A stretch of DNA of 63,533 nucleotides, filler included, from Octopus bimaculoides (taxonomy: Eukaryota), in NCBI RefSeq assembly GCF_001194135.2. It is 6 parts of 6 records of this genome, joined end to end, with 100 filler letters (N's around TTAATTAATTAA, not from the genome) between each part and the next. Parts side by side here need not be neighbours in the genome. Positions count along the whole stretch, not along the records: positions 1 to 19,672 come from NC_069001.1; 5 more parts are not named here. The stretch is one strand, 5' to 3'. Below are positions 3 through 1,544 of the stretch, piece after piece. Each line of letters starts with the position of its first letter. Positions within the stretch are counted from its first letter, which is position 1. The notes under the pieces are model-generated. The model worked only from the letters and a program-made list of their open reading frames with translations, was not told the DNA's origin and did not search any database. Made by a program: the position numbers and the translations under genes.

Positions 3-1364
3 TGAGGCGACCTCTGAGTCAGAATGGGTGCCTTCTAGAGGAGAAGGCAAGTTAAAGTTGAATACATGCCCCCCTTCAGGTACAGAACAAAGAGGTGATC
101 GAGGTGACAGCAAATGCTTCGAATAAAAAGGCGGTGACCTGATGTAAGAAGAAGGAGATAGAGTAAAAGGTTCAGGTGGAGGGGGGCAGACAATTTCTGA
201 TATTGTCATTGGAGGGCCTTTTGTGGGGGATGTCTCGTATGTCCGACTTGACAGATCGAGGGGTTCACATTGAAGTCCGCTGGCTAGTGATGTGTTCGAA
301 GATTGTGGCTGGCCAACAGTTGAAGCCAGTGAGGTTTGGTTAGAGTTGATATCAGCAGTTGAAGAGATGCTTTGGTTTGGTTCGTCTTGAGGATTTTCAG
401 CAGGCATAAAGACATCATTGTCCTTTGTGTCGTCTTCCTTCAGATCCATCTGACAAACACTGCTATCGTCCTCAATACTCGACAGATAGCGAGCCTGAAG
501 GATCTTTTTGTAACTACCGTGACGAACTAAAGGTTTCTCGATTCCTCGATTGCCTTCGTCCTCACACCGCCACTGACCACTCGACTCTGTCCGATTGGGG
601 GACCTGTCGGAGTCAGACGACCGAGTTTCAAGGTTTGTACATTCCGAAGTGCTGATTCGTAGCATTTTGGGGGATTTCTCTGAGGATACAGACTCATCCA
701 ATTTAAGTTTGGACGGCGACTGTAGACACTGGTTCTGATGCTCTTCAAGATCCTGTTCCTTGGCAGGCGATGGCTCTCGACTGCTGGTGCCGCCACCACT
801 GTCTTCAGACACATCACTCACATCCGAATAAGTGAAACTGTGGAGGTAACGCAACGGGGACGCAAGGGGAGATTTTGATTTATAGTTGGGACTTAGGTTT
901 TTGCTCGACCCCTGCTGGGAGTCTAATAACTGTGGCTTTTGGCCCCCAGGGGCATCTTGCCCTTCTAACAACAGTTTTCTTCCTTTCCAAGGTCGAAACC
1001 ACGATAGATCAGGATGATACTCAAGGTTTGGAGGTGGTTGTTGTCTGTAAAGCCCGCGGGTGATTTTAGGTTTTAGAATGTGACTCGTGGAATTGGCTTT
1101 GGAATAATGTTGAGTTTCATGTTCTGTCTTCTGCAGGTTATTGCTACTGTGCACTTCAGTAGTTGCACCAGTGTTAGAAGAGTTATTACTGTTGTGCATC
1201 TCAATGGTGGCACCGGTATTAGGTGAGTTGCAGCTGCTGCCAGCACTGAGGTCTGATCTCTGTTCAGTTTCTTGGCATTTCATCGCCACTAGTGCTGTGG
1301 ACGAGCCAGCGAAGACTTGGCTACCCACATACTCCCCACCGCTCTGGCCCATGTTCCCTAACAT
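3..1364 (-). CDS. First coding exon (3'-partial, runs off window start) of an unidentified Ser/Pro-rich protein, probably a transcriptional repressor
   Basis: Hand translation gives 454 codons with no stop: MLGNMGQSGGEYVGSQVFAG...YHPDLSWFRPWKGRK...SEDSGGGTSS...QCEPLDLSSRTYETSP...FNFNLPSPLEGTHSDSEVASP. An in-frame stop lies upstream at 1425-1427. Start context is accATG at 1364, with an alternative aacATGg at 1352. The region is free of repeats and more GC-rich than its flank. Confidence 0.85.
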   Translation of the reverse strand, partial: MLGNMGQSGGEYVGSQVFAGSSTALVAMKCQETEQRSDLSAGSSCNSPNTGATIEMHNSNNSSNTGATTEVHSSNNLQKTEHETQHYSKANSTSHILKPKITRGLYRQQPPPNLEYHPDLSWFRPWKGRKLLLEGQDAPGGQKPQLLDSQQGSSKNLSPNYKSKSPLASPLRYLHSFTYSDVSDVSEDSGGGTSSREPSPAKEQDLEEHQNQCLQSPSKLKLDESVSSEKSPKMLRISTSECTNLETRSSDSDRSPNRTESSGQWRCEDEGNRGIEKPLVRHGSYKKILQARYLSSIEDDSSVCQMDLKEDDTKDNDVFMPAENPQDEPNQSISSTADINSNQTSLASTVGQPQSSNTSLASGLQCEPLDLSSRTYETSPTKGPPMTISEIVCPPPPEPFTLSPSSYIRSPPFYSKHLLSPRSPLCSVPEGGHVFNFNLPSPLEGTHSDSEVAS

Positions 1365-1366
1365 GG

Positions 1367-1465
1367 TTACACGACGATCAAGGGGTCGTGGTGGTAGCAG
1401 TAAATTGGCAAGACAATGACAAAGCTAATTAAGGTAAAGTGCTCTGGTTGTTCACAGGTAAACAT
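1367..1465 (-). other. Upstream ORF (32 aa) ending 2 nt before the main ATG
   Basis: aaaATG at 1465 reads MFTCEQPEHF...DPLIVV to TAA at 1369-1367, then cc, then ATG at 1364. A second uORF runs 1496-1452 (MCQHFSRQNKNVYL*). Confidence 0.45.
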
Positions 1466-1544
1466 TTTTGTTCTGTCGGCTGAAGTGTTGACACATACAC
1501 ACAAGTGGAGGAGATAGGACAGGTGCTGCGTTGCTCCACCAGTC

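What the first reader, a model, noticed from the sequence alone, without database searches (positions are those of the whole stretch)
3..1544. A 454-codon host coding exon that the ORF track missed
Seen: the minus frame has no stop from 1424 to the window edge, with a strong acceptor at 1545 and a good ATG context at 1364. It is the only long non-repeat frame in 63 kb. It was skipped because its stop lies outside the window. Inference: this is the first coding exon of a gene whose introns or upstream region make up the rest of the window. I cannot name the gene; the segment is low-complexity and Ser/Pro-rich, so any folded domain must lie further 3'.
Basis: partly seen in the sequence, partly recalled or inferred. 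Interest (0 to 1): 0.7.

Follow-up and report, generated by a model that had tools for sequence, protein, structure and literature searches.

The report
Octopus zinc-finger gene exon, cut by gap
The open frame is real: it is the first half of the single coding exon of a conserved octopus zinc-finger transcription factor, already in public annotation and cut short only by an assembly gap, so it is ordinary.

Summary
The minus strand is open from 1424 to the window edge, with an ATG at 1364 (454 codons) and a CAG acceptor at 1547-1545.

The window is Octopus bimaculoides (GCA_001194135.2, CM046621.1), matched exactly. The frame encodes residues 1-454 of a 908-residue C2H2 zinc-finger protein. 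In O. vulgaris and O. sinensis the whole CDS is one uninterrupted 2727-nt exon starting at the same ATG, 98% identical in protein.

In O. bimaculoides, window position 1 abuts a 1616-N assembly gap. That gap holds residues 455-908, all four zinc fingers and the stop. Public records therefore carry only a 453/454-residue truncated model identical to this frame.

dN/dS is 0.14-0.17 in this frame and about 1 in shifted frames, with no indels among three octopods.

The window part is predicted disordered but carries motifs conserved across molluscs, including EPLDLS (a CtBP-type corepressor motif). The fingers in the orthologues are 67% identical to a mosquito protein named chorion transcription factor Cf2.

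The gene is already known, so interest is low. Acceptor use and CtBP binding are inferred, not shown.

The parts
3..1364 (-). Coding sequence for residues 1-454 (MLGNMGQSGG...HSDSEVAS) of a 908-residue C2H2 zinc-finger transcription factor. Positions 2-1 begin codon 455 (Pro).
   Evidence: Translation. It is 445/454 identical to O. vulgaris P0070 from the same ATG. It is identical to the public records P0135 and P0133. dN/dS is 0.144-0.169 against about 1 in shifted frames, with no indels.
1365..1544 (-). 5' leader part of the same exon, holding two in-frame stops (1454-1452 TGA, 1427-1425 TAG) that close the main frame upstream of the ATG.
   Evidence: It is 179/180 identical to O. vulgaris and 169/180 to a third octopod, and both stops are conserved.
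1545..1580 (-). Putative 3' splice site: CAG (1547-1545) preceded by a T-rich tract.
   Evidence: CAG and the pyrimidine tract are conserved in three octopods. Identity to the third species falls from 93.9% in the leader to 78.7%, with indels, just upstream. Its use in transcripts was not shown.
1367..1465 (-). Upstream ORF of 32 codons (MFTCEQPEHF...LIVV*) that ends 2 nt before the main ATG.
   Evidence: Sequence. Its ATG and stop are kept in all three octopods, but its peptide changes at 3 of 4 differing codons.
765..824 (-). Residues 181-200, acidic serine cluster SDVSDVSEDSGGGTSSREPSP, conserved across molluscs.
   Evidence: Invariant S183, E197, S199 and P200 in alignment A1.
468..512 (-). 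Residues 285-299, YKKILQARYLSSIED (family motif [FY]KKxLxxRY). It is the only predicted helix in the window part.
   Evidence: Invariant K286, K287, L289, R292, Y293 and S296. The motif is found in most family members. AlphaFold2 predicts helix 285-299 with pLDDT 72-77.
249..266 (-). Residues 367-372, EPLDLS: a PxDLS-type (CtBP corepressor-binding type) motif.
   Evidence: P[LV]DL[ST] lies upstream of the fingers in 85 of 96 family members, including 13 of 13 insect Cf2-like hits. Binding was not tested.
12..98 (-). Residues 423-451, SPLCSVPEGGHVFNFNLPSPLEGTHSDSE: the most conserved block of the window part and the one that first found relatives.
   Evidence: Invariant S423, P424, L425, C426, V428, P429, E430, G432, F435 and F437. 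CSVPEGG is present in gastropods and most bivalves.
1581..19672 (.). Upstream intron and/or upstream region of the gene. It is AT-rich, full of microsatellites and dispersed repeats, and has nine N gaps. It is colinear with O. vulgaris at 75-90% identity.

Best explanation
Positions 1544..1 (minus strand) are the 5' part of the single large coding exon of an Octopus bimaculoides gene. The gene encodes a 908-residue sequence-specific transcription factor of the Cf2-like C2H2 zinc-finger family.

The exon starts at a conserved acceptor (1545) and carries a 180-nt leader with uORFs. Translation starts at ATG 1364.

The 454 residues in the window form the intrinsically disordered regulatory half. 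It carries short conserved motifs: an acidic Ser cluster, a short basic helix, PLDLS, and SPLCSVPEGG..HSDSE. I infer these recruit partners (most likely the corepressor CtBP through PLDLS) and take phosphorylation.

The DNA-binding half (one isolated finger plus three tandem fingers, residues 538-653) and the stop lie in a 1616-N assembly gap that begins right after window position 1.

Shown: coding status, orthology, gene structure in sister species, and the gap. Inferred: acceptor use, CtBP binding, repressor function, and Cf2 orthology with Drosophila.
For: Open frame and ATG:
- Searches show the frame; shuffles never reach it.

Identity of the window:
- It matches O. bimaculoides CM046621.1 with 0 mismatches over 11364 nt and is followed by 1616 N.
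- Sequence after the gap aligns to O. vulgaris 134 nt past the stop. The gap therefore spans about 1496 nt, which includes the remaining 1365 nt of CDS.
- Accession-to-species mapping comes from PMC10700109.

Gene structure in sister species:
- The O. vulgaris and O. sinensis CDS are single 2727-nt ORFs.
- O. vulgaris P0070 is 98% identical to the window frame from the same Met; O. sinensis P0134 is a member of the same cluster at 90% identity and starts with the same MLGNMGQSGG.

Selection and conservation:
- dN/dS is 0.144/0.169/0.159 in frame against 0.98/1.35 out of frame, with 19 of 27 differences at third positions.
- Identity steps down at 1544/1545, and the CAG and the in-frame stops are conserved.

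Family:
- Orthologues occur across gastropods, bivalves and other lophotrochozoans.
- The fingers are 67% identical over 127 residues to mosquito 'chorion transcription factor Cf2'.
- Pfam finds four C2H2 fingers at 538-653.
- AlphaFold2 gives residues 1-454 pLDDT below 50 except helix 285-299, and folds the fingers confidently.
- PLDL[ST] is present in 85 of 96 family members.
Against: - No transcript or junction evidence was available. The one Logan contig from a related octopod (L004) runs colinear with the genome across the acceptor, so it says nothing about splicing.
- The zinc fingers are not in this window or in this species' assembly. Their presence in O. bimaculoides is inferred from sister species and gap size.
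- The Cf2 label rests on a source's automated name for one mosquito protein. D. melanogaster CF2 was not compared directly, and it is reported to have more fingers (PMC2876027).
- No paper links CF2 to CtBP or PLDLS.
- The AlphaFold2 alignment had only 9 sequences.
Confidence: 0.9

Rival explanations
1. The frame is a transposon ORF1/gag or other repeat-derived ORF, not a host gene.
For: The window is repeat-rich. The product is low-complexity and has no Pfam domain.
Against: It occurs once in the window. It is syntenic and colinear in O. vulgaris, with flanks aligned on both sides. Every relative is a 700-1200-residue C2H2 host protein with the same motif order. dN/dS is 0.15.
Confidence: 0.01
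2. The frame is a chance open frame or a decaying pseudogene fragment in O. bimaculoides, and the gap hides a real disruption of the gene (insertion or rearrangement). This species would then make only a finger-less 454+ residue product, or none.
For: The public model in this species is truncated at 453/454 residues even in the chromosome-level assembly. The 1616-N run is 120 nt longer than the 1496 nt it replaces in O. vulgaris.
Against: There are no stops, frameshifts or indels in 1362 nt, and the O. bimaculoides branch shows the same low dN/dS as the others. Both flanks of the gap are colinear with O. vulgaris. N-run length is only an estimate. The missing part in sister species contains Ser/Asn/Thr-rich low-complexity runs, and my guess is that these are hard to assemble from short reads.
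Confidence: 0.04
3. The exon is not preceded by an intron. Transcription starts upstream of 1545 and the 'acceptor' is unused, so the gene is wholly intronless.
For: The CDS is intronless in sister species. A related octopod's contig reads straight through the site. The 140 nt upstream of 1545 are still 93% identical to O. vulgaris.
Against: Identity to the third species drops from 93.9% to 78.7%, with indels, exactly at the CAG. The CAG and pyrimidine tract are kept in all three species. An O. vulgaris gene model spans at least 9.9 kb upstream and ends inside this leader (L003 9936, equivalent to window 1429), which is consistent with, though not proof of, upstream exons spliced onto it.
Confidence: 0.15

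Closest known systems
Octopus vulgaris / O. sinensis 908-residue C2H2 protein (P0070 on OX597834.1; P0134 on CM016879.1) and the truncated O. bimaculoides models (P0133, P0135)
   Same: Same gene. P0133 and P0135 are identical to the window frame. P0070 is 98% identical with the same start codon, and its flanks are colinear with the window.
   Different: The O. bimaculoides records stop at residue 453/454 because of the assembly gap. The sister-species records continue through four zinc fingers to residue 908.
Mollusc and other lophotrochozoan orthologues listed as 'uncharacterized protein' (Littorina saxatilis, Babylonia areolata), 'early growth response protein 1-like' (Haliotis asinina), 'zinc finger protein 777' (Patella vulgata), and bivalve, Lingula, Owenia and Lineus proteins
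   Same: They share the motif order MxG start, SEDS..SSREPSP, [FY]KKxLxxRY, DVFM, EPLDLS, SPLCSVPEGG..HSDSE and then 1+3 C2H2 fingers. The fingers are nearly invariant.
   Different: Outside the motifs the N-terminal half is barely alignable (31-51% over parts). Caenogastropod and heterobranch gastropod models (Littorina, Babylonia, Lymnaea; 1046-1223 residues) and some bivalve models (Sinanodonta) carry long extra N-terminal stretches; other bivalve models add about 25-35 residues before the MxG start, and Haliotis and Patella begin at it. The source names (EGR1-like, ZNF777) are generic and inconsistent.
Insect chorion transcription factor Cf2 (Drosophila CF2; here a mosquito protein so named, P0131)
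   Same: 85/127 (67%) identity across all four fingers with the same spacing, and a PLDLS motif upstream of the fingers. Drosophila CF2 is a zinc-finger regulator that can repress (Act88F) or activate muscle genes (PMC2876027; PMC5472297).
   Different: Drosophila CF2 is reported to have extra N-terminal fingers and an alternatively spliced finger that changes DNA specificity. The octopus protein has four fingers in one exon and a much longer disordered N-terminal half. No similarity outside the fingers and PLDLS was detected. D. melanogaster CF2 itself was not compared here.
PxDLS-motif zinc-finger repressors that recruit CtBP (for example Drosophila Kruppel, Knirps and Snail, and vertebrate ZEB; from general knowledge)
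   Same: A PLDLS peptide sits in a disordered region N-terminal to C2H2 fingers.
   Different: This is a resemblance of mechanism only, with no sequence relationship beyond the motif. Binding was not tested.

Membership tests
Cf2-like C2H2 zinc-finger transcription factors | One isolated plus three tandem C2H2 fingers carrying the signatures SRSDMLTRH, SRSDHLNTH and AACRRDMITRH | not testable with these tools
   In this window and this species' assembly the region lies in a 1616-N gap. It is present in the 98%-identical O. vulgaris and O. sinensis orthologues and is nearly invariant across molluscs.
Cf2-like C2H2 zinc-finger transcription factors | High identity of the finger domain to a protein named Cf2 | tested here: met
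   O. vulgaris orthologue against mosquito 'chorion transcription factor Cf2': 67% identity, 80% positives over 127 residues, E 3e-59. The test used the orthologue, not the window, and the name is a source's automated label.
Cf2-like C2H2 zinc-finger transcription factors | Direct orthology to D. melanogaster CF2 (reciprocal best match, shared finger count and alternative finger exon) | not tested
   No D. melanogaster sequence was retrieved. The literature describes more fingers and alternative splicing in the fly, whereas the octopod CDS is one exon with four fingers.
Cf2-like C2H2 zinc-finger transcription factors | PLDL[ST] motif about 180-500 residues upstream of the last finger (a shared feature seen here, not a published definition) | tested here: met
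   Window residues 368-372 (positions 263-249). The motif is present in 85 of 96 family members and 13 of 13 insect hits.
Transposon ORF1 / gag | Recognisable gag/ORF1 domain, multiple dispersed copies, adjacent pol/RT ORF | tested here: not met
   No Pfam family at E<=1. All relatives are C2H2 host proteins. The locus is single-copy and syntenic.
Cephalopod lineage-specific expanded C2H2 genes | Cephalopod-restricted genes with many tandem fingers (general description; PMC12513265 abstract) | tested here: not met
   There are only four fingers. Orthologues with the same motif order occur across molluscs, in the nemertean (Lineus) and brachiopod (Lingula) hits, and, for the fingers and PLDLS, in insects.
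Protein-coding exon under purifying selection | dN/dS well below 1 in the proposed frame only, third-position bias, no frame-breaking indels | tested here: met
   dN/dS is 0.144-0.169 in frame against 0.98 and 1.35 in shifted frames. Differences by codon position are 6/2/19. There are 0 indels in 1362 nt among three species.

The most novel reading that the evidence does not exclude
The PLDLS motif in this exon marks an ancestral, so far unreported property of the whole protostome Cf2 family. On this reading, these factors act as CtBP-dependent repressors from insects to octopus. The mollusc proteins would add a set of further conserved short motifs (SPLCSVPEGG..HSDSE, [FY]KKxLxxRY) for partners still unknown. 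I found no paper linking CF2 with CtBP or PLDLS.
Probability: 0.4. Interest if true: 0.3.

Novelty: already known. Interest (0 to 1): 0.15.

Why it matters

For octopus genomics the practical point is small but concrete. The O. bimaculoides reference still carries a truncated, domain-less model of a conserved transcription factor, because a 1.6-kb gap hides its DNA-binding half. Users of that proteome would misread it as an orphan disordered protein.

The conserved PLDLS and neighbouring motifs give a testable handle on how Cf2-type factors repress transcription. That handle is a lead, not a result.

Tried and rejected
- **Pfam on the 454 residues:** no family.
- **Rfam and tRNA scans of the piece:** nothing found.
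- **Bacterial promoter/terminator scan:** at shuffle level and irrelevant for a eukaryote.
- **First homology search with the window protein:** it returned only two distant snail-like proteins and not the identical public records. Those surfaced only through a second search with a relative.
- **Solved-structure search:** only generic poly-zinc-finger matches.
- **Logan contig L004 as transcript evidence for the junction:** it is colinear with the genome across the acceptor and ends in a microsatellite, so it is uninformative.
- **Search for upstream non-coding exons by conservation islands against O. vulgaris:** several islands of at least 97% identity turned up, but none had clear exon boundaries.
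- **Transposon gag, chance ORF and pseudogene readings:** rejected on synteny, shuffles and dN/dS.
- **Literature link between CF2 and CtBP/PLDLS:** none found.

Full report
**1. The observation**

From 1424 the frame stays open for 474 codons to the edge of the piece. The ATG at 1364 (A at -3) gives 454 codons down to position 3, and there is a second ATG at 1352. Upstream lies ttttttttctatgtttttCAG|G, with the AG at 1546-1545.

This is the longest open stretch in the 19.7-kb piece. The runners-up overlap N runs or microsatellites. In 1000 dinucleotide shuffles of 1..1544 the longest open stretch averaged 116 codons and never passed 225. The ORF lister does not show the frame because it runs off the end.

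**2. Where the window comes from and why the frame is cut**

- A 453-residue public protein (P0133), identical to the frame but for the last residue, lies on CM046621.1 of GCA_001194135.2.
- The 11364 nt of that locus up to the end of the frame match the window's minus strand with no mismatch.
- PMC10700109 identifies that accession as Octopus bimaculoides, GCA_951406725 as O. vulgaris and GCA_006345805.1 as O. sinensis.
- In the chromosome assembly, the base matching window position 1 is followed directly by 1616 N.
- Sequence after the gap aligns to the O. vulgaris locus starting 134 nt after that species' stop codon.
- The gap therefore replaces about 1496 nt, which includes the remaining 1365 nt of CDS.
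- tblastn of the full orthologue finds only residues 1-455 in the O. bimaculoides locus.

So the stop is not merely outside the window. It is absent from this species' assembly.

**3. What the frame encodes**

The O. vulgaris protein P0070 (908 residues) starts at the same Met and is 445/454 identical to the window product. Its CDS is one uninterrupted 2727-nt ORF, and the same holds in O. sinensis. Cluster members include a 454-residue record identical to the window frame (P0135) and two further octopod versions from read-archive assemblies. The frame is therefore already annotated, as a truncated model.

Pfam finds nothing in the 454 residues. In the full orthologue it finds four C2H2 fingers at 538-653.

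**4. Is it under coding constraint?**

| Comparison | Synonymous changes | Non-synonymous changes | dN/dS |
|---|---|---|---|
| O. bimaculoides vs O. vulgaris | 18 | 9 | 0.144 |
| O. bimaculoides vs a third octopod (L004) | 50 | 31 | 0.169 |

The same statistic in the two shifted frames is 0.98 and 1.35. There is no indel in 1362 nt among the three species.

**5. The exon boundary and leader**

| Region (window) | Identity to O. vulgaris | Identity to third octopod (L004) |
|---|---|---|
| CDS 3-1364 | 98% | 94% |
| Leader 1365-1544 | 99.4% | 93.9% |
| 141 nt upstream of the CAG | 93% | 78.7%, with indels |

The CAG, the pyrimidine tract and both in-frame stops are kept in all three species. 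This fits an exon start at 1544 and a translation start at 1364. Haliotis and Patella orthologues also begin MMGH.., aligned to octopus MLGNMG.

I found no transcript evidence. The one contig from a related octopod is colinear with the genome across the site. An O. vulgaris gene model that spans at least 9.9 kb upstream ends with a stop inside this leader (position mapped). That hints at upstream exons spliced onto it, but I could not retrieve that model.

**6. The family**

- A search with a snail relative found orthologues of 700-1200 residues across gastropods and bivalves, and in nemertean, annelid, brachiopod and bryozoan genomes. Most are unnamed or carry inconsistent generic names.
- An index-free search with the window protein alone recovered bivalve and limpet members over residues 123-453.
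- The alignment shows a conserved motif order inside the window part:
  - MxG start
  - SDVSDVSEDS..SSREPSP (residues 181-200)
  - YKKILQARY (residues 285-293)
  - DVFM
  - EPLDLS (residues 367-372)
  - SPLCSVPEGGHVFNFNLPSPLEGTHSDSE (residues 423-451)
- The fingers of the octopus orthologue are 67% identical over 127 residues, with the same spacing, to a mosquito protein named chorion transcription factor Cf2.
- P[LV]DL[ST] lies upstream of the fingers in 85 of 96 family members, including all 13 insect hits.

**7. Structure**

AlphaFold2 on the full orthologue, with a shallow 9-sequence alignment, gives pLDDT below 50 for essentially all of residues 1-454. The exception is a helix at 285-299. 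The zinc fingers are folded with confidence.

**8. How it most likely works**

Shown: this is the N-terminal half of a conserved zinc-finger protein under purifying selection.

Inferred: the half in the window is a disordered regulatory region. Its short motifs would recruit partners, with PLDLS being the classical CtBP corepressor-binding type (general knowledge). Its 14 Ser/Thr-Pro sites and acidic Ser cluster would take phosphorylation. The missing half binds DNA.

Drosophila CF2 is described as a zinc-finger factor that can repress or activate muscle genes (PMC2876027, PMC5472297). No paper in the library links CF2 to CtBP or PLDLS.

**9. Rivals**

- **Transposon gag or chance ORF:** excluded by synteny, single-copy status, relatives and dN/dS.
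- **Real truncation hidden by the gap:** unlikely, given colinear flanks and the same low dN/dS on this lineage. Only gap closure would settle it.
- **Unspliced leader:** remains possible, at about 15%.

**10. Verdict**

The feature is an ordinary host gene that is already annotated. The only points of note are the assembly gap that beheads the model in O. bimaculoides and the family-wide PLDLS motif.

Noticed in passing
window 1367-1496 (minus strand): The 180-nt leader is more conserved than the coding sequence: 179/180 to O. vulgaris, against a synonymous divergence (dS) of 0.06 in the CDS. It holds two uORFs. The 32-codon one (ATG 1465, TAA 1369-1367, ending 2 nt before the main ATG) is kept in three octopods, while the 14-codon one (ATG 1496) is lost in the third species. 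This may reflect translational control.
   Followed up: partly
L003 1-9936 (O. vulgaris), end equivalent to window 1429: The O. vulgaris annotation has a separate 91-residue gene model that spans at least 9.9 kb upstream and ends at a TAA inside this exon's leader, in another frame. It is probably a spurious CDS placed on the 5' UTR of the same transcript. I could not retrieve its sequence.
   Followed up: partly
window 4920-5469: This non-coding block is 89-90% identical to O. vulgaris, with islands of at least 97% identity (5411-5345, 5217-5121, 5049-4920). It stands out from the neighbouring 74-82% and abuts an N gap (5470-5966). It could be an upstream non-coding exon or a conserved regulatory element. 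No clear splice boundaries were seen.
   Followed up: partly
window 6000-6302, 7505-7821, 15170-15292, and inverted at 9907-10038: Copies of a dispersed repeat of a few hundred bases (63-86% alike). The same repeat is also present at three places in the O. vulgaris locus (L003 about 1569-2016, 2639-2824, 6509-6655). It is probably a SINE-like element and has no Rfam or tRNA match.
   Followed up: no
window 12453-12536 and 14158-14241: Two 84-nt direct copies, 87% identical and 1.7 kb apart, apparently from another dispersed repeat.
   Followed up: no
window 8624-8762: A 64-nt unit repeated 2.2 times at 100% identity, close to an N gap (8510-8572). It could be a recent tandem duplication or an assembly artefact.
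   Followed up: no
window 5344-5994, 10907-11494, 16561-17346, 17775-18389: The other 'long ORFs' in the mechanical list each span an N run (5470-5966, 11077-11290, 16952-17312, 17993-18362) and are artefacts of gaps, not candidate genes.
   Followed up: yes
window 3193-3575 versus L003 5353-7868: O. vulgaris has about 2.5 kb between two colinear blocks where the window has about 380 nt. The window's N gap 3194-3239 lies just outside this interval, so it may hide part of the difference. This is an insertion/deletion, or unassembled sequence, in the upstream region.
   Followed up: no
tool behaviour, versus 25, 29 and 33: The word-indexed homology search with the window protein did not list the identical or 98%-identical public records. 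These appeared only via a relative's search and via the index-free search. A 'no close hit' from that tool should not be read as 'unannotated'.
   Followed up: yes
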